Shown in pieces: positions 440 to 43,300 of a DNA stretch of 64,000 nucleotides. The DNA comes from Octopus bimaculoides (Eukaryota): contig NC_068982.1 in NCBI RefSeq assembly GCF_001194135.2, positions 63,501,608 to 63,565,607 of the forward strand, read 5' to 3'. The notes beneath the pieces were generated by a model. That model did not search any database. It was given only the letters and a program-made list of their open reading frames with translations, and had not been told where the DNA came from. The stretch's first letter is position 1, and each line of letters starts with the position of its first letter. A program made the translations under genes and the position numbers.

Positions 440-527
440 TTTCTAAGACGCCACCAATGCGATCGAACCCAGGATTTTGTGGCTGGAGCGTGAATATCTT
501 AATCACTCTACCACGCTGCAGCTACGG
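440..527 (-). mobile_element. Decayed tRNA-derived SINE head
   Basis: Minus strand reads GCAGCGTGGTAGAGTGATTAAG (A-box-like) ... CCTGGGTTCGATCGC (B-box-like); no recognisable body. Confidence 0.4.
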
Positions 528-4290: not shown

Positions 4291-6574
4291 ATATATATTT
4301 ATATTATGATACAAACCATACACGTACAATTCAGTTTATGGTGGGGATTTGATCTAAGTTTGTTGGACATAAACCCAAGCCAACTAGCAGAAGAGGAGAG
4401 TCTTTATGTAAGTTGTGGGTATATTAATGGAATAAATAAATCCGTGTTTTCTGGCCGAATTTTGTGTTTTATCCCTTAGCTACTCGAGCTATTTCATAAT
4501 GGAGTGAGTTAAATTTCAAGTTAAATTTGAATCGATAACTCACCATCATCAGATTCTAATTCAGGAAGATTATATAGTTTAACAAATGTCAATTCTGTCG
4601 AAAAACCAGTTTTGTATGCTGACTAATATAGAGAAGTAATTCTGTTCATTTGCAAATAATTTGCAACCAGCTTCTAGTGTGTGTGCGCGTGTATGTGTGT
4701 GTGCGTATGTGTGTGTGCGAGAGACAGACAGACTGACAGAGAGTGGGAGGGGGAGAGAGAAAGTGTGTATATGAGTGTATGTATTCGCAAACCTGCGTCC
4801 GCGTGTGCGTGTGCTTTCTATGTTTTACATTCATACAGTCATCATTTTATTTTCAGAAATTCTCTCTTTTCCGCCTATATTTTTGCTTTAGTTTGTATTA
4901 TCTTTTACTCTTCTTTTGCTTTTATACCTTTTTGACAATCATCACCATCGCCATCGTCATAGTTTTTATGGTCATGGTACTCATCATCATCACCATCATC
5001 ATCAGCAGCACTGTCATCAGTGTTCTTGCNNNNNNNNNNNNNNNNNNNNNNNNNNNNNNNNNNNNNNNNNNNNNNNNNNNNNNNNNNNNNNNNNNNNNNN
5101 NNNNNNNNNNNNNNNNNNNNNNNNNNNNNNNNNNNNNNNNNNNNNNNNNNNNNNNNNNNNNNNNNNNNNNNNNNNNNNNNNNNNNNNNNNNNNNNNNNNN
5201 NNNNNNNNNNNNNNNNNNNNNNNNNNNNNNNNNNNNNNNNNNNNNNNNNNNNNNNNNNNNNNNNNNNNNNNNNNNNNNNNNNNNNNNNNNNNNNNNNNNN
5301 NNNNNNNNNNNNNNNNNNNNNNNNNNNNNNNNNNNNNNNNNNNNNNNNNNNNNNNNNNNNNNNNNNNNNNNNNNNNNNNNNNNNNNNNNNNNNNNNNNNN
5401 NNNNNNNNNNNNNNNNNNNNNNNNNNNNNNNNNNNNNNNNNNNNNNNNNNNNNNNNNNNNNNNNNNNNNNNNNNNNNNNNNNNNNNNNNNNNNNNNNNNN
5501 NNNNNNNNNNNNNNNNNNNNNNNNNNNNNNNNNNNNNNNNNNNNNNNNNNNNNNNNNNNNNNNNNNNNNNNNNNNNNNNNNNNNNNNNNNNNNNNNNNNN
5601 NNNNNNNNNNNNNNNNNNNNNNNNNNNNNNNNNNNNNNNNNNNNNNNNNNNNNNNNNNNNNNNNNNNNNNNNNNNNNNNNGGTGGTGGTGGTGGTGGTGG
5701 TGGTGGTGGTGGTGGTAGTGGTGGGGACTACGATGACGATAATGTTGATGATAATCGTAACGTAGACGAGAAGCGACAATCGTGTTGACGGTAACGACGA
5801 CGCAAAGTGAAAAGATGAACATGAGCTGAAAATTAGGTGGAAGGCTAAGATTTCACATTTATAAATCTTGAACGGATGTATTCAGCACTTAATAGTTAAC
5901 ATTTGCTATCATCAATTATGGTCTTACCTTAGATCTTAAATCGATTTTCTGTTCGGCTAAACAGATTCCCTTGACACTCCACTAGTTCGGTCGGGTTATT
6001 TCCTTCGATCCATCGAGTGTGTTTTTGCCACTCTCACTATTTCCTACACAAAGACCTTTCATTGCATAAGCAACATAAAAGTATGAAGATAACAAACTGT
6101 AAACCTACTTTGAAGTTTTTACGAAGGAATTTTCAATATTTCAAGAAAAACAGCTTTTCTATTTAACATTTACACGCAAACACATATCGAATATTCCATT
6201 ATATACGTTTTGAAATTTCACATTGCTAATACATATTAGTCGGATCAGAGAGCTTCATTTATTAGAATCAACTTTTAATGCTGTTGTTGCAAACAGACTT
6301 TGGTCGTCTAATCCGATTCTATTATTTTCTCAGCATATATAGAGAAACAGAATCTGAATAAATTTATACATTGATTAATTTGAAGTCAATTCTAAAATAA
6401 TCCAAGTGTGGATTATTTTAAAGTTTAAAAAGAGCTGAAGAATGTCTCTAGAATTTTGATTGTCATGTAGGTTCCATTAAGCCAGTGAATGTCACATATT
6501 GCAACAATTAACCGGGAATCTTAAGGTAGTTGGAACAGAAACACACCATTAGTGCGCGTGCAAGTATACATGTA

Positions 6575-9500: not shown

Positions 9501-11179
9501 CATGTGTATCTGAAATTGGTACGAAGATATTGAGTTGAAATAAATATTCATAAAAAGCTTCTCTATTTTGAGAATGGTGTTTGATATATACTAGTACTTA
9601 AATATACTAAAAATAAGAATTAGATCTTTTTCCTTTTTCTTATACAGTTCATCTAAATTTAACGAATAATAGAAATTTATGAAACTTTGGTACCTCATAA
9701 TGGAATATATAGTCTGCGAAATAGGAGACAAAAATTGAAGAACAAGAAATGTTTTTTAAAAGTATCATCGTACAGATGTGCACAATAATTATCTAACATT
9801 TTCAAATTAAACAATTCTTATATTTTAACATATTACAGAAAGAAACAATATTGAACTCATTGTGGAATAAATTATATTTGTAAAGCTGGATTAAAGACAT
9901 TAATATTTGAATATCTGATGATTCGTACAAAACTTTTCGAGTAAATGAGGGAATATACAGCAAAAAATACATTGATAATGTATTCTTAAAGACGATAAGA
10001 TTAAAATCGATTACAATCAACTCCAAACGTAGGGTGCAAGTGTTTGTCACAGCATTTTATCATGATCAATTTTTCATTCTTCAGGCAGTGATGTTTTTGA
10101 TTGAAATGTAATCTAACAGCGTGAATATATCATTTTCAATGGAATTTAGGATTCGCACATTAAATAGTTTGTTTTCTTAATTTTTGTTTACCTTTCAATG
10201 TTTTATATTTTGTTTTTTTCCATCTCTACCTTCGTTCAATCTCCTGATGCCAGGCTTCTGTTCGAAACAGTATGATGTTTTTTATCTTTCTGATCATAGA
10301 ACTAACAACTGAAACCTTTATTGTTGCTGATATAGGCTTGATATTTTCATATTTCTACATCTATCATACGCGTAATCGCACATCAGGTATCCACCGATTC
10401 CACTCTGATTCTTGCAGTTCATACACCATCATACATGAAAGAACGTGTGAAGATGAATAAAGCAAATAATGATTGACACAAAGAATGTATGATTTAATAG
10501 AATGAAATATATCATAACAGTCATTACTATATTTATTCGTGTTTCTTTTTTTCAGTTCAGTCACTAATGAATATGCGTGGAGAGAGGGGGGAGTTAGTAT
10601 AAGTTTATGAATGAAAGTGATACATAGGAATTATTTCAATGCTATTCTGTATTCCTGAGATAGATGTTAAGTAGTCATGTGTTGTTATTAAGTATAACTA
10701 CCCGAACAAGCAGAAGAAAAAGTATGTGTATGCATAGCCAAGGTGATTTGCATAATTTAAACATGAATGAACTAAAAGAAATAAGCAAGGGTGGATAATG
10801 ACGTGTAGTTTAACAACAACGATAAATATTACATGTGTGTGTGTGTGTGTGTGTGCGCGCGCGCGCGCGGACCCGACTGTGTGCGCACGCGAGCGTGTGT
10901 TAATTAAAATGAGTGTCCAGTGGCATGATTTGAAGAAAATAGACAAAATCAGATATACTAATTATCATACAACATAAATACTCGATATATTAAAATTATC
11001 TCCGCCTCGAGAGGATGTGCCAATTCACATCTATGCTAATGATTCCTCAGTTCATATTACCTGCACAAAAACTACAAATATTAATCCGTTTCAGTTCTAT
11101 ATTTAAGAGATGAGGAATTATTTACATTATTTACATTATTTACATTTGACGGATATTTGTCCTCATCTTGTTTGTTGTT

Positions 11180-11225
11180 AACACAACGTTTCAGCAGATA
11201 TCCCCTCCAGCCTTCATCAGGTGTC
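11180..11225 (-). ncRNA. Minimal type-I hammerhead ribozyme (left arm)
   Basis: Minus strand GACAC-CTGATGA-A-GGCTG-gaggggatat-CTGCT-GAAAC-GTT-GTGTT; intact core, ACGT palindromic stem III, GUU triplet; stem II has one mismatch and one wobble. Confidence 0.8.
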
Positions 11226-11292
11226 TTGGGGAAATTTCAAACTTGAGTTCTCATTCCTAAGGTATTTTTCGATGTTATTATTATTATTATTA

Positions 11293-11342
<50 letters not shown>

Positions 11343-11388
11343 GTTATTATTATTATTCAGGTCACTGCCAAATGGCGCTCTTAACCAC

Positions 11389-11461
11389 GGGCATATAGCG
11401 TAGTGGTTACGAGCGCGGGCTACTAACCTCAAGATTCCGAGTTCAATTCCAGGCAGTGGCC
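11389..11461 (+). promoter_or_regulatory. tRNA-like Pol III head (A and B boxes)
   Basis: TAGCGTAGTGGTTA 11396-11409; anticodon-like loop CTACTAA; GAGTTCAATTCC 11439-11450; no TTTT run until 11704, downstream of the element. Confidence 0.8.
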
Positions 11462-11464
11462 TGA

Positions 11465-11531
<67 letters not shown>

Positions 11532-11589
11532 CAACAACAACAACGAAAAATACCTTAGGAATGAGAACCCAGGTTCGAAATTTCTCCAA

Positions 11590-11635
11590 GACACCTGATA
11601 AAGGCCTGAGGGTATATCAGCCGAAACGTTGTGTT
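11590..11635 (+). ncRNA. Minimal type-I hammerhead ribozyme (right arm, G8A lesion)
   Basis: GACAC-CTGATAA-A-GG(C)CTGA-gggtata-TCAGCC-GAAAC-GTT-GTGTT; fold intact but core reads CTGATAA. Confidence 0.7.
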
Positions 11636-12047
11636 AACAACAAACAAGATGAGGACAAATATCTGTCAAATGCAAATAATGTATTAATCCGTTTCATCGA
11701 GTCTTTTTGATTTGAGAACGCATTATATGTACGGCTTTGATTCTGATTACTGCAAAATTTGTGCATTTGTTTGGTTGCATGGTGACTACATTTTCAAATT
11801 CGCACCTAAAAATTAATAGACCTACATTCAAATAAAAGTTCTTGAATGTAACAATATTTTGCATAAACACACATGCATGAGAGTTTCAATATGTTGTATA
11901 TATGTTTACTGTCTGTAACTACATACATATGCGTATATCTTAACAAATATATACATGTATGTAAACATCTAAGCTCCAAATTCTCTCTTAATCCATCTTT
12001 TTCCCTCTCCTCTCTCTATCTCTCTCTCCCACTCAGGTTTTTGCTAA

Positions 12048-14428: not shown

Positions 14429-14601
14429 TGTATAGATATACACACACATATATATATATATATATATANNNNNNNNNNNNNNNNNNNNNNNNNNNNNNNN
14501 NNNNNNNNNNNNNNNNNNNNNNNNNNNNNNNNNNNNNNNNNNNNNNNNNNNNNNNNNNNNNNNNNNNNNNNNNNNNNATATATGTATATATATATATATA
14601 T

Positions 14602-17007
14602 ATGATGATTGCTTCATCTTGAAATGATAGCCGTCCCATCAACACACACACACCCCACATCCCATCTCACAGTACAATCACTCCGTTGATGAGCTTTTAG
14701 ATGACTTTTAAAACCAGCTGCTGACTGACAGGGTTTAAAACACAAGTGACAGATCTTATTCAAGTTTCTTCTATATCTTTTCCCTTTAGAATCTGACTCT
14801 AAAGGAATGTGTTTTTATGAACTAGCATACGTCTTTTATGTCCCGATATTGTCTTACAAGTTTTTTGACATATGACACATGTCGTAAGAGGTGGTTGGTG
14901 TCCAAGATCATTAGCTATCTGGGCATTACAATTTTCATGTAACTTCATATGATTCACGTATCCTGCTTTTGACAACAGAACATGATCACACATAATACAT
15001 ATCCAATGTTCACTGCTGATTATAGTTTCATTGGAACTGTTCAGAGTGCTGAATCATCTTTTTTACAATCAGTCCTAACAGCACCTCTCCACTTGTCCCG
15101 ATCTAGAGCAACATTTTCCCAATCACTTTTGTTAATATCTAGTTTCTTCAGGTTTCCTTCACACAGTTTTTATACCTTTTCCTCGGCTTATGTTGTGGTT
15201 TCTTACCAGATTTGAGCTCACCATAGAAAAGACGCTTTGGCAAGCGGTCGTCTTTCATTCTAATAACATGTCCAGTCCATCTCATTTGAGCCAAGATAAC
15301 ATGTTGTTCGATTGAGCTGCAACGTGCCATGCGCAGTACCTCTGCATTTGGCATGAAACATTCCCACTTGATTCCTATGATACGTCTGAGGCACTTTTGA
15401 TGAAATCTTTCCAGCATTTTATGCGATGCTTGTCAGTGGTCCATGTCTCACTTGAATAAAGAAGAGAAGACAATACACACGCTTTATAAACACTTTTTTT
15501 GTCTGCAGGTAAATACCGTCATCCGCCCATACTAGCTTTTCGTGCTTTCCAAATACAACACTTCCTTTCCCTATTCAATAGTATATCCCTGCATCAAAAC
15601 TACCATCTCGTGACTTTATGCTTCAACTCATAATGAAAGAAAGTATTCCCAACAATTAACCATAGCTCAGAGCACATTTGTAGCAGATGCAACCCATTGT
15701 TGTTCACCTTTCCTATTCCATAATGCCCGAGTACATTCTAAGCACCATAGCCTCTACCAACACATGCATTAAATTCATCAAGTACAACCAATTTTTCATT
15801 CAAAGGGACTGACAGAATACTTCTTCTAAGCTCCTCATAAAATGCATGGTTATTTTCCTCACTAGCTGAAAGTGTAGGAGCATAATTAGAGAAAAAGTTA
15901 CAAAGCGCCAACAAGAAAGAGGGAACCGGACTTTCATTATGCGTGTATTTATGTTTTGTGGCTCTTCTAGGTCTTTTTGCAAATCACTTCTAATTGCAAA
16001 CCCAACACTACCTTCCCTTTTCTCTCCCTTCGGTTTCCCAACCGAGAATAATGTGAAACCTACCGCTCTTTCAACAATATGATCTACATCTGAACATCTT
16101 GTTTCAGAAAGAGCTGCAATATCGACATTAAGACGCCTTAGCTCCTTAATTACTAGAGCTGTTCTTCTTTCAGGTCTATCTGCTCGATCTAAAAGGGTTC
16201 TCACATTCCAACAGGTCAGGTTAAGAGAAACCTTATTCCTTGAAAGCTTGTTATTATTGTTTGTATCAATTCTTTGTTCATTCCTGTTAAAATTGAACCA
16301 CCGCTAACCGCAGTAAAACTAACCAGCAGAGAGAAGACAGACAATTTTTAGTGCACCTTTTCTAGCACCTTCCTAGTATATCCAGTATTCTCCTTAAAAG
16401 GGTTGCTCAGACACATGATTCTCCACCGAAAACGGTTCCTGTCCATGCAAACATGTTAGTGGTGTTAAGATAAGAACCCTGCCGCCTTATGTGAAGATTT
16501 GTAACTGTATGCTTCCGACCGGTCAAGTCTTCATACGTTGCCACGCCTCTATCGCCATAGGACTTTTGAAAAGTGATGATTGTACGATGATAGTGTTTTG
16601 TTGGGGACATCCGTACTTCATTGAATTTCAGTGACAAACACTTGTACGACACTTTTGCCACACTCTGGGTCGAAATATTAGATTCCAGTGACAAGCAAAG
16701 CAAAATGACTATTACTAAGTTGACTTCAGATTTTATGTCGGAGTACCTTCTCCTAGGCTTTTCCTCAAAAGGATACTGCAAGCCAGCAGTGGTAAGTGAA
16801 TTTGAATTCGGAGCTTTATTTTCCTATACTGGTTGTCCTAATCACGGCTTCGTTTCAAAACAGGAGTCCAGTCTGCCCCCATCAACAGTCATGGCCTTGA
16901 CAGTGCAGCCAGTTAAGGAACTGTCATTACCATGACCTGGTTTTATGTCAGAGTGTCCTTCTCCAAGAAGAGTTACCATCACCACGGCTAATGAGCCTTA
17001 TCAGCCC
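14602..17007 (-). mobile_element. RTE-clade LINE, internally deleted (APE start fused to post-RT C-terminus)
   Basis: RTLLDRADRPERRTALVIKELRRLNVDIAALSETR (APE N-terminus); junction near 15602 to ...LLYSSETWT, ERFHQKCLRRIIGIKW, QMRWTGHVIRMKDDRLPKRLFYGEL and C-terminal Cys/His motifs; long 5' UTR. Confidence 0.9.
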
Positions 17008-19650: not shown

Positions 19651-20397
19651 AGCGAAATAAATACGTAACTGCGTCCGATTCAGAATGAATATGTTGCATT
19701 ACCAAAGAATTTAAAAGTATTAACCACTTTAAATGACATATTTCTAAAACGTAAATCCACATACGCTCACAAATAGATGCATAAACACATCCTTATATGG
19801 TTGCGTACATATAAAGGAAAGCAGTTACTTATATAGNNNNNNNNNNNNNNNNNNNNNNNNNNNNNNNNNNNNNNNNNNNNNNNNNNNNNNNNNNNNNNNN
19901 NNNNNNNNNNNNNNNNNNNNNNNNNNNNNNNNNNNNNNNNNNNNNNNNNNNNNNNNNNNNNNNNNNNNNNNNNNNNNNNNNNNNTATATATATATATATG
20001 TATATACTATCAAGAGTGAAGTTCAATCTTGCTAGCTTGCAATGTTACACAGCAAAACTGGCGCACAATGGGAAAATACTTTGAAGGCAAAAACCCCTGG
20101 AATGTGAATACGAACGGAATAAAGCAAGCTTTGCATAAATCGGACCAGTAGTAATTGCGATATTTGGGGTTTGTGGGTATAAATATCCAATTTATACCCG
20201 AAAATAACTTCACCTTTAAAGGGAAGAGACTCTAACCTTTCCATTTGACACGTTATGAAAGGCAAAATATTTTTAACTGAAAATGACTTTAAAAATACGG
20301 TGAATATTTTGTAAAAGACTCGTTCGTAACCTCGGTATGAAATACTTTTTCTCCATAGGTTTCTTTCGAGTGCATTCAAGGTATCTCACTTCCAAAG

Positions 20398-24356: not shown

Positions 24357-25724
24357 TCAGGTCATCCCATAAGTTCTGTCCGATTTTACCTTTTTTTTAA
24401 ATTGAATGAAATTTAATAGTATTTTAGAATGTCTAATGCACATTAGAAATTATTTTTTTGCATTTGTGTACATTTAAATTAATTAAATATTATTTTTTTG
24501 GATTTGTGTACATTTAAATTAATTAAATATTATTTTTTTGCATTTGTGTACATTTAAATTAATTAAATATTATTTTACAGAATAATAGAAATAAAATTTC
24601 TTTGATTAAATCCTTTCTAGCATGGAAGTATCCAAAGAGCAGTTAAGGCACATAATGCTTTATGAGTACAAAAAAAGAAACTCTGCAGCCGAAGCGACAC
24701 GAAACATACACTCAGTCTATGGGAAAGAATGCTTGAATGAAAAACTTGCAGAAGATGGTTTGCAAAATTCAGAAGTGGAGATTTCAGCCTTGAAGATGAA
24801 GATCGAACAAGACGTCTAGTTGAGTTTGATGAGAAGCCCCTTCAGGCATAACTTGAAGAAAATCCTGCATTATCAGTTGAAGAATTGGCAATAAAGCTTA
24901 GTTCAAACCATACAACTGTTCTTCGTCATCTTCAACAACTTGGAAAAGCTCCTAAACTTGGAAAATGGGTGCCCCATGAATGGTCCGAAACCAACCGCAA
25001 ATCCCGAGTTGACATCTGCTCTTTTCTCCATTCTCGCGAACTCATTTCACCCTCTTTGGATAGACTTGTGACTGGTGACGGAAAATGGACCTTCTATCGA
25101 AATGTTAAACGTCGTAAACAGTGACTTGGTAAAAGGGAAAGAGCTCAACCACAACCGAGAAGGGAACTTCATGGAAAAAAGGTTTTTCTCTCTATCTGGT
25201 GGGATTGCAAGGGAGTAATTCACTTTGAATTGTTACTGCTTAATACAACAATCAATGCTTAAGTCTACTGTCAGCAATTAGACGGTTTGGACCAAGTTTT
25301 AAAGAAAAAAAGACCCGCTTTAGTGAATCGAAAAGGAGATATGTTTCATCAGGACAATGCGCGACCCCACACTGCAAAGATCACATCACAAAAGATCGAA
25401 GAGCTAAGTTGGGAATAAATTCCTCATCCACCTTATTCTCCCGACCTTGCTCCTTCAGATTACCATTTGTTTCGTAGTTTACAGAATCATTTGGGGGACA
25501 TAACTTTCGCAAGCCAGGAGGATGTCGAAACTGACATTTCAGAGTTCTTCGCTTTGAAACCAAAAGAGTTTTACATTGATGGGATTAAAAAGCTTCTAAA
25601 TAGATGGAAGAGAGTCATAGATAATCAAGGAAAGTACATTGATGATTAAATGTCAATTGAATATAACATTCGATCACTTGTTTTCTTTATTCAAAATTCG
25701 GACAGAACTTATGGGATGACTTAA
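24357..25724 (+). mobile_element. Mariner (D,D34D) transposon, defective transposase
   Basis: TIR TCAGGTCATCCCATAAGTTCTGTCCGA after TA; degenerate right TIR; KWVPHEW, VTGDGKW, HQDNARPH, YSPDLAPSDYHLFRSLQN; stops and frameshifts. Confidence 0.95.
24451..24576. repeat. 40-bp tandem triplication in the mariner 5' UTR
   Basis: TATTTTTTTG(C/G)ATTTGTGTACATTTAAATTAATTAAATAT starts at 24451, 24491 and 24531; single and diverged in the 51815-53093 copy. Confidence 0.9.
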
Positions 25725-26105: not shown

Positions 26106-26161
26106 GATAGATATGTATATATACTTGCACACTCGTACACACATATATATGTTAATTGGCA

Positions 26162-26475
26162 TGGAGGCACAATGGCCCAGTGGTTAGGGCAGCGGACTCG
26201 CGATCATAGGATTGCGGTTTCGATACCCAGACCGGATGTTGTGTGTGTTTATTGAGCGAAAACCCTGCTGAACTCTTTCATTACAACTTTCTCTCACTCT
26301 TTCTTCCTGTTTCTGTTGTACCTGTATTTCAAAGGGCCAGCCTTGTCACACTGTGTCACACTGAATCTCCCCGAGGACTACGTTAAGAGTACACGTGTCT
26401 GTGGAGTGCTCAGCCACTTGCAAGTTAATTTCACGGATCAACTGGAACCCTCGTCGTCGTAACCGACGTAATGTC
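26162..26475 (+). mobile_element. tRNA-derived SINE (same family as 30851-31224)
   Basis: TGGCCCAGTGGTTAGGGC A-box, GGTTTCGATACC B-box; imperfect TSD ending TTAATTGGCA at 26152-61 and 26484-93; internal deletions relative to the other copy. Confidence 0.85.
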
Positions 26476-27559
26476 ATATAATATTAATTGGCAAAAGTAC
26501 TAACAAGGCAGAGTAACTATGTATACAGAAATAATATGCAGCCCATTTGCTAAAAATCGTTTTAGGTTGGGTACTTTCAAGATAATCTGTGATTTCACCA
26601 CAACAGCTTTAACAACATAGGAGAGTAAGAAGCGTCCGACTGGAAAACAATTGATTTTTTCAACTTCTTAATTCATGGTGTTTCAGTGAATGGGTCATGT
26701 GCTTCATGGAAGAACTCCGCTCAAAAGGAAATAAATACATGGAATCACATTCATAAGTACATAGTCTTTCTGTAAAAGTAGGCCCATGTGATAGTAAATA
26801 CGCAGTGTTATGGTTGTTATTGTGTATGTATATATGTGATACGTATTTAAAGAGAGAGAGAAAGAGAGAGACGTATTTATACGCATAAAATTTTACTTTT
26901 GTTCTCTTCTGCGTGTGTGCATGTGTGTGTGTGTGTGTGTGCCTACTCGCGTGCGCATATGTCCTGCTAAAATTGTAACATATTCTGATGTCTATTCATG
27001 CTTTGTATCCTCTCACATCATTATTCTGTATTCAAGACATTGAAGCTCTGTCTATATATTATAACATTTTTATTATTTCAATGAATAAATTTTATTTGCT
27101 GTTACTTAGAAAATTGTTTATAGCATTTAATATTTCAAGTAAAAACAGAAAACTTACGAACATTGGATATTATTTCTTTCTTACCTCAAAAGTAGAAACT
27201 AATTGTGTTCCAACTATCACGTTTTCGAAAGTGTATTTTGGCTATATATAACAAATAAATGATAATTTGTAACCAAGCTTATTAATAGTTAATTTAATTT
27301 CCGTTCTCGTTTTCTAATCTATTCAGCTTTGTTTTGAATATTTCTGAACGTTTTAAGCTGTAATCCCAATATATTTTTCATAAACAAAAAGTACCTAATG
27401 CTCTTAGGACTCGAAGAGTTTTAATACATTTTCTTTATCGCTAAGAGCTAAATTTACTTTCTTATACAAAACGACAGCCTAAAAATGAAATATATTTATC
27501 TAGGGAGCTCTAAAAGATATAGGAAATTATTATACACCAATATTTAACTCACCCGCTTC

Positions 27560-28029: not shown

Positions 28030-29390
28030 CCCTGCGCCATTAAAATCATTATTTACTACCTTAAAGGAAAAGAAATTAACTGTGGCAAAGCTCTGGGAGC
28101 AAATGAAATTTCTGAAGAACTGTACAGGGCACTGAGTACCACGGCTTCCAATGCATTCCTTGACATTCTTGCATCCATTTGAGAGGAATAGAGTATGTCA
28201 ACAGGCTTCCGAGATGCCACCATAATTACACTCTACAAGAACAAAGGAGCCGAAACAGACTGCAGAAATTACAGGGGAATTTCTTCGCTTTCCATTGCTG
28301 GAAAAATCCTGGCCCGCATCCTCTTTAATAGGCTTATCACCAGCATCTTCAAGAGCAATTTGTCTGAAGTCCAGTGTCGCTTCCACCCTGGCTGCAGCAC
28401 CGTAGACATGATATTTGCTGTCTGACAAGTCAAGAAGATATATATTGAGCAACGGATGGATTTGTACACTGTGTTCATAGACCTGAGCAAAGCTTTTGAC
28501 AGTCAACAGAGAAGCTTTGTGGACCATCCTAACTAAGATGGGCCGTACACTCACGTTCACCACATTTATAAAACTCTTTCATGACAATATGAAATCTCAG
28601 CCAATACAATCTCAGCCAATGGATCGTGGGACAGCAAGTTTATCCAGAATCGACAAGGCCAGCCAAGCACTTGGAAGACTGAAAGTGAAAGTTCTCCAAC
28701 AGAAAGGCATCAGACTATCGACAAATCTCAAGATCTACGAGGCTGTAGTCGTTTCTACACTACTATATGGATGTCAAACATGAACCCCATACCGTCGGCA
28801 CATTAAACAGTTGGAATAGTTTCACACAAGGGCACTGCACAGGAATATAGGCATTCGCTGGTAGGGCAGTGTAACAAACCAAGAAGTGCTGGACAGAGCT
28901 TGTTCAACAAGCATTGGGTCAATGTTGCTGAGGCTTAGTTACTCTGTACTGGCCATGTTATCAGAATGACTGACAACTGTGTACTCAGGCAGCTATTATA
29001 CAGTGAGCTCGCGTAGGACTCACGCAAACGAGGAAGGCCTAAACTGAGGTACAAAGACACTCTGAAAAGTAACCTCAATTGGAGCAACATTAGCCCACGC
29101 AAACTCGAAGCTTCTACCGCAGACGGATTAGCGTGGAGGTCTCTGATCTCACAAGCAGCAGCTTCCTTCGAAGAGGACTGGTAACAGCCAGCATCTCGGT
29201 GCTGCAAGAGAAAGTCGTCACAGGGCAGTATCCACCTCAATCCAGTCAACAGACTATCGTTCTGATATTTGTGGGTGCCTGCATGCTTCGAGCTGTGGAC
29301 TGCAAAGTCACATACGCTGTCGTCACTGAAAACAAAGGCTTTAGCGTCATCCGACACCGATGAACTATCTATCTCCTTAAATATCAGTCC
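28030..29390 (+). mobile_element. RTE-clade LINE fragment (RT and C-terminus, decayed)
   Basis: FRDATIITLYKNKG..DCRNYRGISSLSIAGKILARIL, FIDLSKAFDSVNREALW, LLYGCQT, GHVIRM, GRPKLRYKDTLK. Confidence 0.9.
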
Positions 29391-30850: not shown

Positions 30851-31224
30851 GTGGAGGTGCAATAGCTCAGTGGTTAGGGCAGCGGACTCGCAGTCATAGG
30901 ATCGCGGTTTTGATTTCCAGACCGGGTGTTGTGAGTGTTTATTGAGTGAAAACACCTAAAGCTCCACGAGGCGCCGGCAGTGGGTGGTGGTGAACGCTGC
31001 TGTACTCTTTCACCACGACTTTCTCTAACTCTTTCTTCCTGTTTCTGTTGTACCTGTATTTCAAAGGGCCACCCTTGTCACACTGTGTCACGCTGAATAT
31101 CCCCGAGAAGTACGTTAAGGGTACACGTGTCTGTGGAGTGCTCAGCCACTTGCACGTTAATTTCACGAGCAGGCTGTTCCGTTGATCGGATCAACTGGAA
31201 CCCTCGACGTCGTAAGCGACGGAG
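30851..31224 (+). mobile_element. Full-length tRNA-derived SINE with 13-bp TSD
   Basis: TSD TGCGTATATAGTT at 30838-50 and 31225-37; TAGCTCAGTGGTTAGGGC A-box, GGTTTTGATTTCC B-box. Confidence 0.9.
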
Positions 31225-32709
31225 TGCGTATATAGTTAATCAAAGCCGGATGAATTCGTTATTTTCTTCTCTTTACTTACGTGAATTGTGAGTATTGCTG
31301 TCTGGCAGTTATCTTATGGTAGACGAATAGTATTTAACTGCTATTTCTAAATTTCGGTATGTGGTGAAGCAATTTTGCTGAACCCTAATTATAATTATGC
31401 TTATAATTATAGAATTTTTGTAGAAGGTTACCGATAAAAGCTATTTTAACATAGCGAACTACTTCGTAAAGTTATTAATTAATTAATTAATTNNNNNNNN
31501 NNNNNNNNNNNNNNNNNNNNNNNNNNNNNNNNNNNNNNNNNNNNNNNNNNNNNNNNNNNNNNNNNNNNNNNNNNNNNNNNNNNNNNNNNNNNNNNNNNNN
31601 NNNNNNNNNNNNNNNNNNNNNNNNNNNNNNNNNNNNNNNNNNNNNNNNNNNNNNNNNNNNNNNNNNNNNNNNNNNNNNNNNNNNNNNNNNNNNNNNNNNN
31701 NNNNNNNNNNNNNNNNNNNNNNNNNNNNNNNNNNNNNNNNNNNNNNNNNNNNNNNNNNNNNNNNNNNNNNNNNNNNNNNNNNNNNNNNNNNNNNNNNNNN
31801 NNNNNNNNNNNNNNNNNNNNNNNNNNNNNNNNNNNNNNNNNNNNNNNNNNNNNNNNNNNNNNNNNNNNNNNNNNNNNNNNNNNNNNNNNNNNNNNNNNNN
31901 NNNNNNNNNNNNNNNNNNNNNNNNNNNNNNNNNNNNNNNNNNNNNNNNNNNNNNNNNNNNNNNNNNNNNNNNNNNNNNNNNNNNNNNNNNNNNNNNNNNN
32001 NNNNNNNNNNNNNNNNNNNNNNNNNNNNNNNNNNNNNNNNNNNNNNNNNNNNNNNNNNNNNNNNNNNNNNNNNNNNNNNNNNNNNNNNNNNNNNNNNNNN
32101 NNNNNNNNNNNNNNNNNNNNNNNNNNNNNNNNNNNNNNNNNNNNNNNNNNNNNNNNNNNNNNNNNNNNNNNNNNNNNNNNNNNGAAATGTCCGATTTTGA
32201 ACTGAAAGTTTATTTTACTTAATCTCAACAAAAAGCAATGCAGTTAATCAAAGTATGCACCTCAATTATCAACGCGATTTTGCCATTTTAGCTGTAGTTT
32301 ATATATGCCGGCATTTAAGACTTCTGGAGGGCAAGAGGTGATGAAATAATGAAAGGCTGTTTTTGCATCTTCCTCAGATTTGAAATTTTCTCTTTGCAAA
32401 AAGTTGTCTAATGTCTGGTAAACGTGATAGTAATTAGTCTGGCGAATATAGTGAATGACGGAGTACTTCCAAGTTCACTTCCTGTAACTTGAGTAGCGTT
32501 CTATGTGCAACATTTAGTCGAGCATTATCTTGCAAGAGATTTGTCTCTATTGACCAATCACGGTTGTCTAATTTCGAGTTAACTCATCATTCCATTCAAT
32601 TGGTTGGTATATGTGTGAATATATATATATACATATATATATATACGTGTGGATATGTATTATTCGCATGGGTATGTATAATTGTTTGCATTTATGTACT
32701 GTGGGGCAT

Positions 32710-33237: not shown

Positions 33238-35339
33238 ATATATATACATCATCCATGCAAGGTTATTTTAATAGCCTTATAGAGCCACTTGTAAAGCAGT
33301 ACGGCTATTTTTATAAATATAAGCATAGAAAAGAAAGTGAAGTTCTAAAAACACCAAAAATCATAGCTGATAAAATCTGGTTCTATTCAGCTTCCCCATA
33401 CCTCAAACATTTTGATCACTTAGACTGTAATATAAATGATAAAATGTGTTGAAATCCATTCATCTCTTGACCTTTAGGCCACTGTATTTTCAATAACTAG
33501 CTCCGATTTGAAAGCCCATCCTTGTTCCTTTTAGTTCTGTAGTTAAGTGTGATAAGCTTTATTTCTGGTGGAATTGGATCGTCTCTCCTACACTCAACGG
33601 ACACTCAAAACTGTACAGAAGCTAAATTACATACTTCAACAAAATTATCGGCCTCTTTTGATGTTTCCAGACCCGAACAGCCACACGTCTCGGTAAAAAA
33701 TTGAAAATTCTCAATAAATTTGAATGTAGAGCAGTGCTACCAATACAGATAAAGAAGAAAAGAATACTATGTAAGGAAGATTTATCAGCACAAACTTTTG
33801 AACAATATAATATGAGCCATAAAAAATGAAATTTGAACATATAAATTGCAATCATTTATTACATCGGCTAGAAATGGACGATACAGAATGAATGATTTAT
33901 TATCAAGTGTTCAACAAAAATGTTTGAAGTCAACAAGCTTCAGAATGCCATTTTCCAAGCATATAAAGGAAAGCCAATTCAAAAGTTATTTGGTCACCAA
34001 AAACGTATAATACAAACTGTTATATTTATATTTTAAGTAACTAAATAGGATAAACTCAAACACCGCAAATCGTGATGTCATCCTCAATAATAATACATTT
34101 TCTGATAGACTGATATCAGCTGAAAAACATATTATCTTTTGTAAGATTTCATTCGAAATAGATAATTTTAGGAATAAAATGTAAATTCCAAACGAAAATA
34201 ATATAAAACAGAAAGAATTGTTCAGCTTTCTTTTAACTGAAAATGGTGAGGAGAAGTGCTTTCCGAAATGCGTTGATATCACAGTATCAGCGTAAATTAT
34301 AAAGTGGATGGTCGGATGGCAAAACATATATGTATAAAACAAACAATAACAAATACAAAAAAAAGTACTAATGACATGTAAGACAAAAGGCGTTGGTGTT
34401 AAGAGTAGAGAAGGAGACGACTGACTTTAAACATCCGAAAGGTATAAAAACGAAGGCATTTGATCTAAGAACAAAACTATGCTATTCATCATACATATTT
34501 CAAATAAAATTATTTAATGACAATGCCGTTATCAGCGGAGTGGTATGAAACATTTGTAACTATTAATAGTAACAAAGATGTGCCTTTATTTGACGATTTT
34601 TTTTCTGGTCTCCAGTAGCATGTGACGCCGATAAGTGCTGTGTCCCAGTCTCATTAGATGGCACTGCGTACATGATCTTTGCAGAAAATGACAATACGCT
34701 TATGAATAGATATTCGATTAGATGCAATTTTACGAAGACATCGGTTGTGAATAAGCTGCACTGAATAGTTTATGTGTGTGTGTGCGTGCGTACATATGTG
34801 TGTGTATGCATATATTTATGTATGTATATGTATATTTATATATACATGTATCAGGGGCGTGCCGTCTAGGCAGTGCATACCTTGGATGAAATTGATCAAT
34901 AAAAGTTTCTTTTCATATCAAAATATTCACCTAATTCAATAAAGGTTTCTCTGATTATTATGCAAAATATTTTTTTTAAATGAAATAAAAAAAAAATTTT
35001 TTTTGAAAATATTTTAATCGTCTGATAAAATCTTTTTAGTCGGTGGACACTTATTTTATTTTTATTTTTTATCTTTATTTACTTTATATTTGTCCATTAG
35101 GTTTTTTGGTAGATTTGAATTTTTAGTCGTTATATTTAACTTTTGATAAGCCGTTCTATTTGTATTTTATTAGAATATATATTTTTACCTTCTGTGATTA
35201 TATGTATATGCAGGATTATTTTTTTATGTGTTTGTAGACCATGGTGTTTTTTTTTATATATGATTAAATGTTTGAGGGGTGGTGTTGTATGAAAAGTCGT
35301 TGACCCAAATTTAATGTTTGTTCTATAACNNNNNNNNNN

Positions 35340-39800: not shown

Positions 39801-39840
39801 TAAACTATCCATATTTTGCAGAAAAATCTGNNNNNNNNNN

Positions 39841-40355: not shown

Positions 40356-43300
40356 TTATTATTATTCGGTAGTCTTATTTTTATCACTTACTTTCACTTC
40401 ACTACCGAGCGCAGCTCTGTGTGCCTTGGGTATGTGCTGTGGTTTGTTACGATGCTCTTCTTTTTACTATATTGAAAGTGTTTTGTGTAGGATGTGTGCG
40501 GTGCTTAGTAGTTCTATTTTCTGTATATTATATATACTTGTAAATCCTAGTGTTTTTCTTATGTATTTGTCTAAATGTTTTTTATCATACCTAATGCGCC
40601 TACTATTATAGAAATTGTGCTTGTTTTTAGACTCCACATTCACCTTACTTCTATTTCTAGTTCTGCATTTTGAAAGTTTCTCCGTTTCTTTTAGAAAAAC
40701 ATTGTCATCTGTTGGTATTGATACATCGATTAGAAAGCAACTCTGTCAACTATATCCGGCCTATAGACCTTAATTTCTCTATCTGTGCGTATTGGCATAT
40801 CCTATAGTATCATTGCTTTCTCATTTTCAGTGACCTTTTCTGGTGTGTGCTTATACCATATTTTTCCTGTTGTTGTTCCATAGTGTTGGCATAGCTTCCA
40901 GTGTATATAGATCCCAACTCTGTCGCGTCTATCAATATATTCCTTCTTAACCAGGACTGGGAAACCAGAGACAATATGATTTATTGTTTCTTCTTCATCA
41001 CATATTCTGCAGTTACTTGCATTTCTTTTCATTGCAAGTTTTTGGTAATTTCTGGTAGGGTGGCTTTGGTCTTGTGCTGCAATTAAAAATCCTTCAGTTT
41101 CTGCTTTGAATCCTGAGCTTCTCAACCGTAATCGGGATTTTGCTTTGTGTATTTCTTTTCTGTTTAGTTTAATCCAGTATTTGCCATGAAGGGACTTTCC
41201 TTGCCATCGTTTTATCATAATCCGTTGCTGTTCCAGTTTTAGTTTGGGTTTAAGTTGTTTAACAGCTTTTGTTGTTTCTTCTTTTTCTTCATAGTCGTTA
41301 GGTACTATGATTTTTATTTTCGTATTTGTCAGTTTCCGGAAACAGTGTTTTGTTTTGTTCATGTTTTGTGGTTACTTGTATCAGTTTTCTTTGCTTCTGA
41401 AATAAATATTTCCTATGGGGATTATTTTGTAATAGTTGTATAAGGCCTCTACCATCTTCCATACGTTGTATATATAACATTTCTGTCAGATTTTGGGTGG
41501 TGCATCCTAAATCCTGACATTATTCTTCTTACTTTCCTATCTATTTTGATTAGTTCATTAAGAGTTCAGTTAAGAATACTGCAGCTGTAACTTGTAACTG
41601 GGACGGCTAGAGAATTCATACCTGTTATCTTGTTTTTCGCATTAATCTCTGTTTTCAGTATTAATCTAATTCGTCTATAGTATTCCTTTCTCATCTACTC
41701 TTTGATTTGTGTGTGTTGTATCCTGTTTAGTTCATTGCTTCCTAAGTATTTGTATGTCTTCTAATTCTCTTATCTCATTTACTTTATCTAATGTGATGTT
41801 GCTATTCTTAACTAGCTTTCCTCTTTTTAAGGTTGCTTTGGTACATTTTTCTAAGCCAAATTTCATGCTTATTTCTTTGGTAAATCCAGGTACTATCTGT
41901 AATAATGTTTCCAGCTGTTTATCATTTGTAGTGTAGGGTTTTAGATCATCCATATATTAGTGGTGGCTGATTGTTTTGCCATAACAGTTGTATCCACATT
42001 CAGTTCTACTTAGCGTGTCAGATAAAGGTGTCAGTGCGAAGCAGAAAAGGAGTGGAGACATGTGTGACATGAGGAATAACGTCCGGCTCTTCATGTTGCT
42101 GGTCATCATTTTTCTAGGGTACCGGTCCGTTCATTTCTAGTGTCAAATTGTTTTGCAAGTGCAGTTTTCCATACTTTTTGTGTAACAAGTTCAAAATACG
42201 TACTTCCCGTTTGTTATCCTTGTGTGTCTTCTAGTGGGGATGGCTTTAGTTTGGATGAGATCCTCTTTTGTCTGGAGCTGTATCAATGTCTGCCAGTTAT
42301 TCATGGGATGTTTTATATATTTTATGATTATTGGTGCTACCTTGTTCATGGCTAGTGTTTCTAAGATCCATCTATGGGGAATACTATCAAAAGCCTTTCG
42401 GTAATCGATTCTTAGACCCTTCTTCTTTCTGCGGCTGTCTTCAGTTATGGCTTTATTGATCAGTGGCTGATCTTTACAGCCGTATGAGCCCTTGCAGCAT
42501 CCCTTCTATTCTTCTGGAAACAGATTCTTTTATTCCAGATGCTTGCTCATCTTCTGCAATATTATCGCAGTAAAGGCTTTGTAAATTGTAGGCAAACAAA
42601 ACATTGGTCTATATTTTGTGGGTTTACCGTTTCAGTGGACTTGGGAATTACGATAGTGTTCCCTTCGTTGAGCCATTCAGGCATTGTCTCTAATTCTGCT
42701 AGTATTTCATTAAATTTCTCAGCCAGTTTTTCATATGTTCCTGTCAGGTATTTTAACGAGAAGTTGGGGAACTTGTGCTCGGGGGCCTTCCAGTTGCTTA
42801 GTTTTTGCTGTGCCTGGATGACCTATTCAGTTGTTATACGGGTCCAATATTGCTCAGACGCTATGTTCGTTGTTTTGATAGACGTTTTCGAGGTTGTTCC
42901 TTCGCTAACCATATTTCTTTCCAAAATTCTTCCAATTCTTCTGTTGTTTGATCCCTATTTTATTTTTGCCAAGTTCTTGGTAGGATCTTTTGGAGTTGAA
43001 GTTGAACTGTTTCTTTTGTTCAAAGAAACTTTGGCGTTTCTCATACCAACCAATTGTTTGTGATTTGGCGAAGATATCTTGCTTTAGCTGTTCTTTTACC
43101 TCAGGTATACCTTGTTCTGTACTTTTGCATTTAGGTAGTACTTTTCTTTCTCTTCTTGTTGCTTAGTAGTCGTGATTGTCTACTAGTTTCATTAAGTATT
43201 GACAGATCCTTTTTTTATTTTCTATTTTTTCTGGATATTATTTATCCACAGGGTTTGTTTGGGTGGGGATACTCGTGTTTGCATGGGTTTGAAGTGGTAT

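What the first reader, a model, noticed from the sequence alone, without database searches (positions are those of the whole stretch)
11079..11696. Palindromic tRNA-headed SINE with a hammerhead ribozyme tail
Seen: one 588-bp insertion with a clean 15-bp TSD. The right half is a tRNA-like A/B-box head, (AAT)n, about 60 nt, an HHR and a tail, with no Pol III terminator before the end. The left half is an inverted copy whose head is reduced to a 14-nt piece (11375-88), with a longer tail ending in AAATAATGT repeats. The two HHRs are damaged at different positions (left stem II, right G8A), so their consensus is intact. Established: SINEs normally borrow LINE 3' ends; an inverted 5'-truncated partner and minimal dimer-type HHRs are PLE hallmarks. 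Inference: a Pol III SINE that parasitises Penelope machinery and processes its own 3' end by self-cleavage. I know of no formal description of such an element, but cannot exclude one.
Basis: partly seen in the sequence, partly recalled or inferred. Interest (0 to 1): 0.92.

Follow-up and report, generated by a model that had tools for sequence, protein, structure and literature searches.

The report
tRNA-headed SINE with Penelope-type tail

Summary
An exact 15-bp target-site duplication flanks a 588-bp insert made of two inverted units, 91% identical in the body. One unit is full-length: tRNA-like head with A and B boxes at tRNA spacing, (AAT)n, body, minimal hammerhead (HHR), tail.

I recovered related copies by translating the 3' module and searching protein libraries. 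One is an annotated Octopus bimaculoides ORF. Six loci come from one Logan run series and two from a more distant species. Head, body, HHR and tail co-occur at three further loci. Two are head-to-head dimers and one is solo. The consensus HHR core is intact and its helices covary modestly. So the family is real.

The anatomy matches Penelope-like element (PLE) integration:
- inverted partner copies with variable junctions;
- two classes of 3' end about 40 nt apart, the PLE "tail";
- a PLE-type minimal HHR.

The self-cleavage idea fails. Every copy keeps 51-91 nt beyond the cleavage site, so the template RNA was uncleaved. The partner PLE was not found, and Pol III transcription and ribozyme activity are untested. 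tRNA-headed, HHR-bearing SINE-like elements (schistosome Sm-alpha) and PLE-linked retrozymes are already described, so this is a new variant of a known kind.

The parts
11079..11093 (.). Left copy of the 15-bp target-site duplication, TATTAATCCGTTTCA
   Evidence: Exact direct repeat D7, 603 nt apart
11094..11133 (-). 40-nt 'tail' extension present only on the left (inverted) unit. It ends ...AATAATTCCTCATCTCTTAAATATAGAAC
   Evidence: Unaligned 3' overhang of the left unit against the right. The same long ending is conserved in L017, L018_L, L019, L021 and the O. bimaculoides ORF P0031.
11134..11184 (-). Left unit, A/C-rich region 3' of the HHR cleavage site. It includes AGAUGAGGA, which can pair with UCCUCAUCU in the tail.
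   Evidence: The first 41 nt counted from GAAA are identical in both arms.
11180..11225 (-). Left minimal hammerhead: helix I GACAC/GUGUU, core CUGAUGA intact (11220-11214), extra A, helix II of 6 bp plus a bulge, GAAA, CG, U, H17 at 11185
   Evidence: Descriptor hit. Chance expectation.
11226..11270 (-). Left unit, body 5' of the HHR
   Evidence: 91% identical to 11545-11589
11271..11355 (-). (AAT)n linker of the left unit, read as (ATT)n on the + strand
11356..11388 (-). Remnants of the left unit's head: the 3' end of the head (11356-11369) and head nt 15-28 (11375-11388). Head nt 1-14 and about 35 internal nt are missing.
11389..11465 (+). tRNA-like head of the full-length right unit. A box 11396-11406, B box 11440-11450. 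Position 11389 corresponds to tRNA nt +1.
   Evidence: The homologous heads at L005, L010 and L021 are 64-76% identical.
11464..11544 (+). (AAT)n(AAC)n linker of the right unit. It is a locus- or lineage-specific expansion of a short AATAATAA linker seen in L005.
11545..11589 (+). Right unit, body 5' of the HHR
11590..11635 (+). Right minimal hammerhead with core CUGAUAA (G8 to A at 11600). The cleavage site would lie after 11630.
   Evidence: relaxed core
11631..11681 (+). Right unit, A/C-rich region 3' of the cleavage site. It ends early inside the AAATAATGT repeat (the short 3' end).
11682..11696 (.). Right copy of the target-site duplication

Best explanation
The insert is one copy of a family of non-autonomous retroelements of about 300 nt. 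The order of parts is: a tRNA-derived head with a Pol III-type internal promoter, a short A/T-rich linker (expanded here to (AAT)n), a body, a PLE-type minimal hammerhead, an A/C-rich stretch, AAATAATGT repeats and a terminal 24-nt tail.

Proposed mechanism, with the status of each step:
1. Pol III starts at the head and reads through the unit into the flank, because the unit has no T-run. This is inferred from the boxes and the absence of a terminator.
2. A PLE reverse transcriptase/GIY-YIG endonuclease binds the 3' module, from about the GAAA of the HHR to the tail. This is inferred from conservation and from the PAc model.
3. The target is nicked on both strands 15 bp apart, and each 3'-OH primes cDNA synthesis on a copy of the RNA. 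The resulting structure is shown; the enzyme responsible is inferred.
4. Reverse transcription starts internally at one of two sites, about 51 and about 91 nt past the HHR site. This gives the one-sided 40-nt tail. Two classes of 3' end are seen across copies.
5. The two cDNAs run towards the RNA 5' end and are joined head-to-head. This gives the inverted dimer flanked by one TSD. The dimers are shown; the joining step is inferred.

The hammerhead is a conserved part of the borrowed PLE module. It does not make the 3' end of the element. Its role is probably in folding, pairing or RNP assembly rather than in trimming.

After insertion the arms diverged by about 9%, the right HHR acquired G8A, and the left head lost sequence near the palindrome centre.
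For: Anatomy at the locus:
- TSD, inverted arms, boxes and HHR are confirmed.

The family is real:
- The translated 3' module found 171 related ORFs.
- One is an annotated O. bimaculoides ORF, 81% identical and including the long tail.
- The DNA of 8 other loci shows the same order of parts.
- The same head is joined to the same tail at L005, L010 and L021.

The HHR is ancestral and constrained:
- The core is intact in 5 of 12 units, with only N7 varying, and the consensus is intact.
- 79% of helix cells pair, against 23-52% in slid registers, and 4 pairs change on both sides.
[quoted passage not shown] That paper also reports paired HHRs 100-700 bp apart on opposite strands (PMC4209133).

PLE-type insertion:
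- Inverted partner copies occur at 5 loci (window, L005, L010, L018, L019) with different junctions.
- There are two classes of 3' end about 40 nt apart. This matches the 30-40-bp tail at one end and the inverted 5'-truncated copy described for PLEs (PMC8557442).
- It also matches the PAc in vitro results: both strands are cut and extended, reverse transcription starts internally in an A/C-rich region downstream of the HHR, the tail lies between two start sites, and HHR cleavage is not needed (PMC11167929).
Against: - No autonomous PLE sharing this 3' module was found. None lies in the window, none lies next to any fetched copy, and none is among the protein hits.
- The head is not recognised as a tRNA by Rfam or ARAGORN, and the HHR is not recognised by the Rfam hammerhead models.
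- Pol III transcription, ribozyme activity and mobilisation are all untested.
- Clean TSDs were seen only at the window (15 bp) and at L018 (10 bp). Other copies are old or their ends are uncertain.
- The tail stem-loop is not better than shuffles (z = -1.2).
- The covariation support is modest: 13-29 of 500 shuffles reach the observed values.
Confidence: 0.7

Rival explanations
1. One reading: the hammerhead cleaves the Pol III transcript and so creates the mature 3' end that is reverse-transcribed.
For: There is no Pol III terminator inside the unit. The HHR lies near the 3' end and is conserved in the family.
Against: All copies contain 51-91 nt of conserved sequence 3' of the cleavage site, so the templates were uncleaved. 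Internal initiation by the PLE reverse transcriptase already removes the need for a defined RNA 3' end, and HHR mutants insert normally in vitro (PMC11167929). A minimal HHR with no helix III is inactive as a monomer (PMC4209133).
Confidence: 0.05
2. An ordinary LINE-mobilised tRNA-SINE (for example via RTE, CR1 or L2 elements, which are present in the window) that happens to carry a captured PLE or retrozyme fragment as a passenger.
For: The partner PLE was not found. LINE fragments are abundant in the window, and one lies 0.8 kb upstream of the L018 copy. Other tRNA-SINE families are common here.
Against: There is no poly(A), 3' microsatellite or LINE-like 3' end. The conserved 3' terminus is the PLE-like tail. 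Inverted dimers, two discrete 3' ends 40 nt apart, and conservation peaking from the HHR to the tail are not LINE signatures.
Confidence: 0.1
3. The palindrome itself is the mobile unit. Either it is a foldback or MITE-like DNA element, or a palindromic master copy is propagated as a whole.
For: Three of four head-bearing loci in the octopus-type set are head-to-head dimers (window, L005, L010).
Against: - The outer ends are not inverted copies of each other, because the tail is on one side only.
- A 15-bp TSD is not typical of DNA transposons.
- A solo full-length copy (L021) exists, and so do inverted pairs with quite different junctions (L018, L019).
- Pol III starting at the right head cannot transcribe the left arm.
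- The arms of L005 are only 67% identical in the body, while L005_R is 84% identical to the window arm. They are therefore not sister sequences, and left arms do not form a clade of their own.
Confidence: 0.06
4. A retrozyme-type element that propagates through self-cleaved circular RNA from tandem copies.
For: Related HHR modules occur as tandem units of about 129 nt in other genomes (ORFs P0032-P0035, P0040, P0042). Metazoan retrozymes are thought to depend on PLEs (PMC7229834; bioRxiv 10.64898/2026.07.22.740005).
Against: At this locus and at the fetched octopus-type loci the units are solo or inverted, never tandem. A single transcript therefore holds only one sense HHR and cannot release a unit by double cleavage.
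Confidence: 0.05
5. A one-off chimera, or an assembly artefact, found only at this locus.
For: There is no second copy in the 64-kb window. DNA pattern scans of the viral, metagenome and prokaryote collections found none.
Against: Related loci with the same head and tail were recovered. The arms differ by substitutions and by microsatellite structure, which is not what a read-through artefact gives.
Confidence: 0.02

Closest known systems
Sm-alpha / Sj-alpha SINE-like retroposons of Schistosoma
   Same: They are tRNA-derived; about 2,300 copies are called tRNA-Gln-like (PMC2770079). They are thought to be Pol III-transcribed, short, non-autonomous and high in copy number, and each unit carries a hammerhead (PMC6765202, PMC8490949).
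   Different: Sm-alpha carries a canonical type I hammerhead that is active in cis. It occurs largely in tandem, and the ribozyme is thought to release monomers from multimers. Here the HHR is the PLE-type minimal form with no helix III, the copies are solo or inverted, and the sequence 3' of the cleavage site is kept in every copy. Sequence relatedness was not tested.
Minimal hammerheads of Penelope-like elements (Cervera & de la Pena 2014; Lunse et al. 2017)
   Same: The motif architecture is the same in every listed feature. That study also describes many dispersed single motifs, and pairs 100-700 bp apart on opposite strands (PMC4209133).
   Different: Those dispersed motifs were read as truncated PLEs. 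Here they belong to a defined short element with its own tRNA-like head.
PLE insertion architecture (Craig et al. 2021) and the PAc in vitro mechanism (Frangieh et al. 2024)
   Same: An inverted 5'-truncated partner copy, a 30-40-bp tail at one end, cutting and extension of both strands, internal initiation of reverse transcription downstream of the HHR, and a target site whose left end is A/T-rich.
   Different: There is no ORF and no pseudo-LTR, and a Pol III-type head replaces the PLE 5' region. The distance from the HHR to the start sites is 51 and 91 nt, against about 85-92 nt in PAc.
Metazoan non-LTR retrozymes
   Same: They are HHR-bearing and non-autonomous, and are proposed to use PLE machinery. 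They have been called 'a new type of SINE' (PMC8969392).
   Different: Retrozymes are tandem, lack a tRNA head, and yield circular RNAs. This family is dispersed, carries a head, and is not tandem at the loci seen.
Classical tRNA-SINE / LINE partnerships
   Same: A composite of a tRNA-derived head and a 3' module borrowed from the autonomous partner, flanked by TSDs of variable length.
   Different: The borrowed module is of PLE type rather than LINE type. Insertions are often head-to-head dimers.

Membership tests
PLE-type minimal hammerhead (min-HHR) | Conserved core CUGANGA ... GAAA with a UH cleavage site | tested here: met
   The left arm is intact and the right arm has G8A. The family consensus is intact and N7 varies among U, C and A.
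PLE-type minimal hammerhead (min-HHR) | An unpaired nucleotide between A9 and 10.1; a G10.1-C11.1 pair; helix I of 4-5 bp; an enlarged helix II | tested here: met
   There is an extra A. The outer helix II pairs are GGC/GCC. Helix I is GACAC/GUGUU (5 bp). Helix II has 6 bp plus a bulge. The criteria come from PMC4209133.
PLE-type minimal hammerhead (min-HHR) | No helix III hairpin; positions 15.2-16.2 are palindromic, so that two copies can form helix III | tested here: met
   The sequence is GAAA-CG-UU, and AACGUU is a palindrome. Dimer formation itself was not shown; co-folding was inconclusive.
PLE-type minimal hammerhead (min-HHR) | Located in the pseudo-LTR of an autonomous PLE | tested here: inconclusive
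   No PLE ORF lies in the window or beside the fetched copies. The genome itself could not be searched.
PLE-type minimal hammerhead (min-HHR) | Self-cleavage, as a dimer or with protein help | not testable with these tools
   This needs an in vitro assay.
Rfam hammerhead families | A match to a curated covariance model | tested here: not met
   No hit at the gathering score, nor at E <= 10 on the isolated motif. This is probably because the motif has no helix III hairpin, which I recall those models include; I did not check the models.
SINE (tRNA-derived, Pol III) | An internal Pol III promoter: A and B boxes at tRNA spacing at the 5' end | tested here: met
   TAGCGTAGTGG and AGTTCAATTCC lie 44 nt apart. 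The pattern is unique in the window against 0.002 expected. The 5' end of the unit falls at tRNA +1 in the window and in solo copy L021.
SINE (tRNA-derived, Pol III) | The head is recognisable as a tRNA by standard tools | tested here: not met
   ARAGORN finds nothing at default or moderately relaxed settings. Rfam's tRNA model gives no hit at E <= 10. The acceptor stem is not kept.
SINE (tRNA-derived, Pol III) | A short, non-coding, multi-copy dispersed family with TSDs | tested here: met
   Eight further loci and 171 ORF hits. TSDs of 15 bp and 10 bp.
SINE (tRNA-derived, Pol III) | A 3' end shared with a LINE partner | tested here: not met
   There is no LINE-like tail, poly(A) or terminal microsatellite. 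The tail is PLE-like. This failed feature is what makes the element a variant.
SINE (tRNA-derived, Pol III) | Transcription by Pol III | not testable with these tools
   This needs expression and inhibition data.
PLE-mediated insertion | An inverted 5'-truncated copy adjacent to the 5' end | tested here: met
   Seen at the window, L005, L010, L018 and L019, with different junctions.
PLE-mediated insertion | An optional 30-40-bp tail at one end, reflecting two reverse-transcription start sites | tested here: met
   A 40-nt extension on the left arm only. Short and long 3' ends recur across copies.
PLE-mediated insertion | An A/T-rich target with cleavage at ATT | tested here: inconclusive
   The inferred bottom-strand nick lies in AATA|TTTG. 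The inferred top-strand nick, at TTCA|TCGA, is not in an A/T-rich context. This is my reading for a single site.
Non-LTR retrozyme | Tandem units, each with an HHR, giving circular RNA | tested here: not met
   There are no tandem copies at this locus or at the octopus-type loci. Tandem relatives exist in other genomes.
Sm-alpha / Sj-alpha | A canonical type I hammerhead with a helix III hairpin and loop-loop contacts | tested here: not met
   There is no helix III hairpin and no Rfam Hammerhead_1 hit.

The most novel reading that the evidence does not exclude
The minimal hammerhead may be kept in this Pol III-driven parasite as an RNA-RNA pairing device, not for cleavage. Its palindromic AACGUU would let two element RNAs, or an element RNA and a PLE RNA, pair and enter a dimeric PLE RT/EN complex together. 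The two DNA strands would then each be primed on a different RNA. That would explain why insertions are so often head-to-head dimers, and why the two arms at one locus need not be sister sequences. At L005 the arms are 67% identical to each other, while the right arm is 84% identical to the window arm. In the window, the five helix II differences between arms all preserve pairing. If true, this family would be the first SINE class shown to depend on a non-LINE reverse transcriptase, and it would give the PLE hammerhead a function.
Probability: 0.2. Interest if true: 0.85.

Novelty: new variant of a known kind. Interest (0 to 1): 0.62.

Why it matters
SINEs are defined by their dependence on LINEs. 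A tRNA-headed family whose 3' module and insertion scars are of Penelope type would extend that rule to a third class of retroelement.

It would also give a compact natural substrate of about 140 nt for asking what a PLE reverse transcriptase recognises. The genomic copies already record three things seen so far only in vitro for one lizard PLE:
- priming on both DNA strands;
- two internal start sites about 40 nt apart;
- use of RNA that the hammerhead has not cut.

The family also bears on the open question of what PLE hammerheads are for. The motif is conserved, with compensatory changes, in an element that needs no release from a tandem or Pol II co-transcript, and the cleaved form cannot be the template.

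In practice, many of the dispersed minimal hammerheads and 'unclassified SINEs' reported in invertebrate genomes may belong to elements of this kind.

Tried and rejected
Searches that found nothing useful:
- DNA pattern scans for other copies. Two viral-contig scans were negative. The metagenome-contig scan gave one chance bacterial hit, L001. Two genome-contig scans were negative.
- A six-frame pseudo-protein made by joining all frames with X spacers gave no hit. The single-frame profile later worked.
- Exact look-ups of a window LINE ORF and of P0031 found no record.
- The accessions of the closest LINE relatives (GCA_024449705.1, SRR7158634) did not reveal the organism.
- Rfam and ARAGORN found nothing on the head or the HHR.

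Ideas I considered and set aside:
- A penaeid shrimp origin, because of the microsatellites. Tandem repeats cover only 5% of the window, and the O. bimaculoides hit points elsewhere.
- A stable stem-loop in the tail. It is the minimum-energy fold, but it is no better than shuffles (z = -1.2).
- An open reading frame through the 3' module as a remnant of a PLE N-terminus. It is not significant (P about 0.06-0.1), and no long PLE protein was among the hits.
- The five pairing-preserving differences in helix II as proof of selection. Random substitutions would do this 5-15% of the time.
- Large repeat proteins P0030, P0057 and P0087 among the hits. They are unrelated repetitive proteins.
- Co-folding of two HHR copies. 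It did not clearly give the dimeric hammerhead.
Full report
1. THE OBSERVATION

- The 15-mer TATTAATCCGTTTCA occurs exactly at 11079-11093 and 11682-11696 and brackets 588 bp.
- Inside lie two inverted units. A global alignment of the right unit (11389-11681, + strand) with the left unit (11388-11094, - strand) gives 91% identity over the 137-nt body, and both carry a long (AAT)n tract.
- The right unit begins with TAGCGTAGTGG at 11396 and AGTTCAATTCC at 11440. These are A- and B-box matches 44 nt apart, as in a tRNA. The first base of the unit (11389) therefore falls at tRNA position +1.
- The box pattern occurs once in the window. It is expected 0.002 times in 500 Markov-1 resamplings of the window, which keep its dinucleotide frequencies approximately.
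- Neither unit contains a run of four or more T. The first T5 lies about 20 nt into the flank.

I wrote a descriptor for a minimal hammerhead: CUGANGA, helix II with an optional unpaired 5' nucleotide and one bulge, GAAA, 0-6 nt, UH, and helix I of at least 4 bp.
- It hits only the left arm in both strands of the window.
- It also hits the right arm once G8 is allowed to be A.
- In 300 Markov-1 resamplings of the same kind, the mean was 0.003 hits. None reached the observed helix lengths.

Three details of the finding need correction.
- The left head keeps two pieces, not one: its 3' end at 11356-11369 and nt 15-28 at 11375-11388.
- The left tail runs 23 nt beyond the AAATAATGT repeats, which makes the left unit 40 nt longer at its 3' end.
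- The left hammerhead is intact. Its helix II differs from the right one at five positions, yet all six pairs still form.

Standard annotators see neither feature. Rfam has no tRNA or hammerhead hit even at E <= 10 on the isolated segments. ARAGORN calls no tRNA until its threshold is cut to 70% with introns allowed.

2. IS IT A FAMILY?

The window holds no second copy. Exact-pattern scans of the viral, metagenome and prokaryotic collections found nothing real.

The way in was indirect.
- The sense frame of the 3' module is open from ATG 11561 to the element end. I aligned its translation from both arms (A2).
- I searched that alignment against 1.84 billion protein representatives. It returned 171 hits at E <= 0.001. 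Nearly all are short spurious ORFs laid over other copies of the same nucleotide module. The 'conserved peptide' TPDEGWR..PKRC is simply the hammerhead read in frame.
- A profile of the closest hits (A3) then retrieved entries that carry provenance.
  - P0031 is UniRef A0A0L8FV75, an 'uncharacterized protein' of Octopus bimaculoides. It is 81% identical and includes the long tail.
  - Eleven ORFs lie on Logan contigs from one run series (SRR11869384-94).
  - Nine more distant ORFs come from ENA and NCBI assemblies.

I fetched the DNA of eight distinct loci.

- L005 and L010 are head-to-head inverted dimers of near full-length units. Their heads align with the window's head at 64-76% identity.
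- L021 is a solo full-length unit: head, A/T-rich linker, body, HHR and long tail, with unrelated sequence on both sides.
- L017, from a different and more distant organism (ENA ERZ21867824), is a solo unit with a related B-box half, the HHR and the long tail.
- L018 and L019 are inverted pairs of 5'-truncated units with no heads, and their junctions differ from each other and from the window's.
- L004 and L014 start inside the (AAT)n linker at a contig edge.

So head and tail co-occur at four loci of the octopus-type set, counting the window. In L005 the linker is only AATAATAA, so the 80-nt (AAT)n in the window is a local expansion.

3. THE HAMMERHEAD

- Across 12 units the core is intact in five: W_L, L010_R, L017, L018_R and L021. 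Only position N7 varies among them (U, C, A). The others carry single hits typical of decayed copies, and the consensus core is intact.
- I counted the hammerhead helices I and II on an alignment of 11 units. 79% of cells pair, against 23-52% when the 3' partners are slid by 1-3 columns.
- Four pairs change on both sides, for example GGC/GCC to GGG/CCC. Between 13 and 29 of 500 shuffles reach the observed values.
- This is modest support, as expected from old genomic copies, but it points one way.

The motif shows every feature that Cervera and de la Pena list as emerging in PLE min-HHRs beyond their descriptor (PMC4209133):
- the G10.1-C11.1 pair;
- a short helix I and a long helix II;
- palindromic 15.2-16.2 with no loop 3.

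They also report pairs of such motifs 100-700 bp apart on opposite strands. That is what this locus is.

4. HOW IT WAS INSERTED

Three published PLE signatures are present.
- Craig et al. describe an inverted 5'-truncated copy next to the element, and a 30-40-bp tail often present at only one end (PMC8557442).
- Frangieh et al. showed for the lizard element PAc (PMC11167929) that:
  - the protein cuts and extends both DNA strands;
  - reverse transcription starts internally in an A/C-rich region downstream of the hammerhead;
  - the tail is the stretch between two start sites;
  - ribozyme mutants insert normally.

In the window the right unit ends 51 nt past the cleavage site and the left unit ends 91 nt past it.

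In the alignment of all units, the 3' ends fall into the same two classes:
- short ends, inside the AAATAATGT repeats;
- long ends, about 40 nt further on, finishing ...TCCTCATCTCTTAAATATAGAAC. This ending is conserved even in the distant ERZ21867824 species.

The 41 nt that start at the GAAA of the core are identical between the two arms of the window. The HHR-to-tail stretch is the part conserved across species, whereas the body upstream is not. That is what one expects of the module the enzyme recognises.

The simplest reading is that staggered nicks 15 bp apart each primed a cDNA on a copy of the element RNA. One cDNA started at the inner site and the other at the outer site. The two were then joined head-to-head.

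A Pol III transcript with no terminator of its own has a ragged 3' end in flanking sequence.

5. WHY THE RIBOZYME DOES NOT MAKE THE 3' END

If the RNA were cut after GUU, the 51-91 nt that follow could not be copied. Yet they are present and conserved in every unit examined. Cleavage would separate the head and body from the very region where reverse transcription begins. The template was therefore uncut RNA.

What the motif is for remains open. Its conservation in an element that needs no release from a tandem or Pol II co-transcript argues for a role other than trimming.

6. IS THE PALINDROME INHERITED OR MADE AT INSERTION?

It is made at insertion.
- A solo copy exists (L021), and pairs with other junctions exist (L018, L019).
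- The outer ends are unequal.
- Pol III starting at the right head cannot transcribe the left arm.
- At L005 the two arms are 67% identical in the body, while L005_R is 84% identical to the window's right arm. The arms are therefore not sister sequences. This suggests that two different RNAs served as templates.
- In the window, the five helix II differences between arms all preserve pairing, and three of them are transversions, against none of the seven differences elsewhere. These are hints only. Random changes would preserve pairing 5-15% of the time.
- The loss of head nt 1-14 and of about 35 internal nt from the left arm may be later erosion at the palindrome centre. This is my inference.

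7. WHAT IS NOT SHOWN

- No autonomous PLE with this 3' module was found. None is in the window, none lies in the 40 kb around L017 and L018, and none is among the protein hits.
- Pol III transcription, ribozyme activity and mobilisation by a PLE are inferences.
- The organism is not established.
  - The O. bimaculoides hit fits an octopod.
  - So does my recollection that the other abundant SINEs in the window look like octopus SINEs, but that recollection was not tested.
  - O. vulgaris is reported to have 30 recently active Penelope families and about 900 unclassified SINE families (PMC13282606).
- Clean TSDs were seen only here (15 bp) and at L018 (10 bp).

8. COMPARISON WITH WHAT IS KNOWN, AND NOVELTY

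- tRNA-derived SINE-like elements carrying hammerheads have been known since Sm-alpha and Sj-alpha (PMC2770079; PMC6765202). Those carry a canonical, cis-active type I ribozyme and are largely tandem.
- Metazoan retrozymes are proposed to be PLE-dependent and have been likened to SINEs (PMC8969392; bioRxiv 10.64898/2026.07.22.740005). They lack a tRNA head and are tandem. That preprint does not contain the word tRNA.
- Dispersed PLE min-HHRs were read as truncated PLEs (PMC4209133).
- I found no description of a tRNA-headed element with a PLE-type min-HHR, tail and inverted-dimer insertions. Repbase and Dfam could not be searched.

I therefore rate it a new variant of a known kind, and the family is real.

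VERDICT
- Observation: confirmed.
- Interpretation: partly supported. The SINE-on-PLE idea fits. The self-cleavage idea does not.

Noticed in passing
window 30851-31225 (+) and 26162-26483 (+): Two copies, 75% identical, of another tRNA-headed SINE family. Each is flanked by its own TSD: GCGTATATAGTT at 30839 and 31226, and TTAATTGGCA at 26152 and 26484. They have no A-tail, no terminal microsatellite and no hammerhead.
   Followed up: partly
window 60300-60790 (-) and 59628-60227 (+): Two convergent (tail-to-tail) copies of a third tRNA-headed SINE with an internal (TA)n(TG)n tract. From memory it resembles the abundant octopus SINE, but this was not tested. A further weak tRNA-like head lies at 458-506 (-).
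   Followed up: partly
window 24852-25646 (+) and 52008-52888 (-): Two frameshifted remnants that look like a mariner/Tc1 transposase. I recognised them by eye from the HTH region and the 'PHPPYSPDLAPSDYHLF' motif. They were not scanned against Pfam.
   Followed up: no
window 15151-16303 (-), 40805-42505 (-), 28192-28780 (+): Degraded LINE fragments. Pfam finds Exo_endo_phos at 15803-16303 and RVT_1 at 41735-42505. The closest relatives of the 40805-41371 ORF are only 78% identical (Logan SRR7158634) and 66% identical (GCA_024449705.1), so the window's own genome seems to be absent from the protein collection.
   Followed up: partly
window, ten N runs: 2206-2532, 5030-5680, 14469-14577, 19837-19984, 31493-32183, 35330-35339, 39831-39840, 48673-48682, 57323-57842, 58783-59159: Ten assembly gaps, 2,853 N in all. 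From the ORF translations, several appear to abut microsatellites. Tandem repeats cover 5% of the window, with (AC)n, (AAT)n and (ACAT)n the commonest units.
   Followed up: partly
proteins P0032-P0035, P0040, P0042, P0052, P0054, P0055 (other genomes): The same HHR-to-A/C-rich module occurs as tandem units of about 43 codons (about 129 nt) in other assemblies, which looks retrozyme-like. In P0040 and P0055 the first unit is preceded by a peptide (..NGIRTDDPRGFN..) that back-translates to an antisense tRNA T-arm (GGATTCGAACC). That would fit a full inverted head abutting a truncated sense arm. No DNA was fetched for these.
   Followed up: no
L017 10196-10300: Directly after the long tail of the L017 copy begins another, unrelated tRNA-like SINE head: GGTCTAGTGGGTAGAG...GGGTTCAATCCC.
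   Followed up: no
window 11117-11146 and the aligned units: The 9-mer AAATAATGT is present in 1-3 copies in different units, and the short 3' ends fall within it. This may reflect slippage or realignment of the telomerase-related PLE reverse transcriptase at initiation. That is speculation.
   Followed up: no
window 11561-11681 (+) and 11254-11096 (-): The sense frame through the 3' module is open from an ATG 34 nt upstream of the HHR core to the element end. The left arm has one stop, at a CpG-to-TpG site. This recalls PAc, whose ORF starts at the HHR, but the open frame is not significant by shuffling (P about 0.06-0.1).
   Followed up: yes
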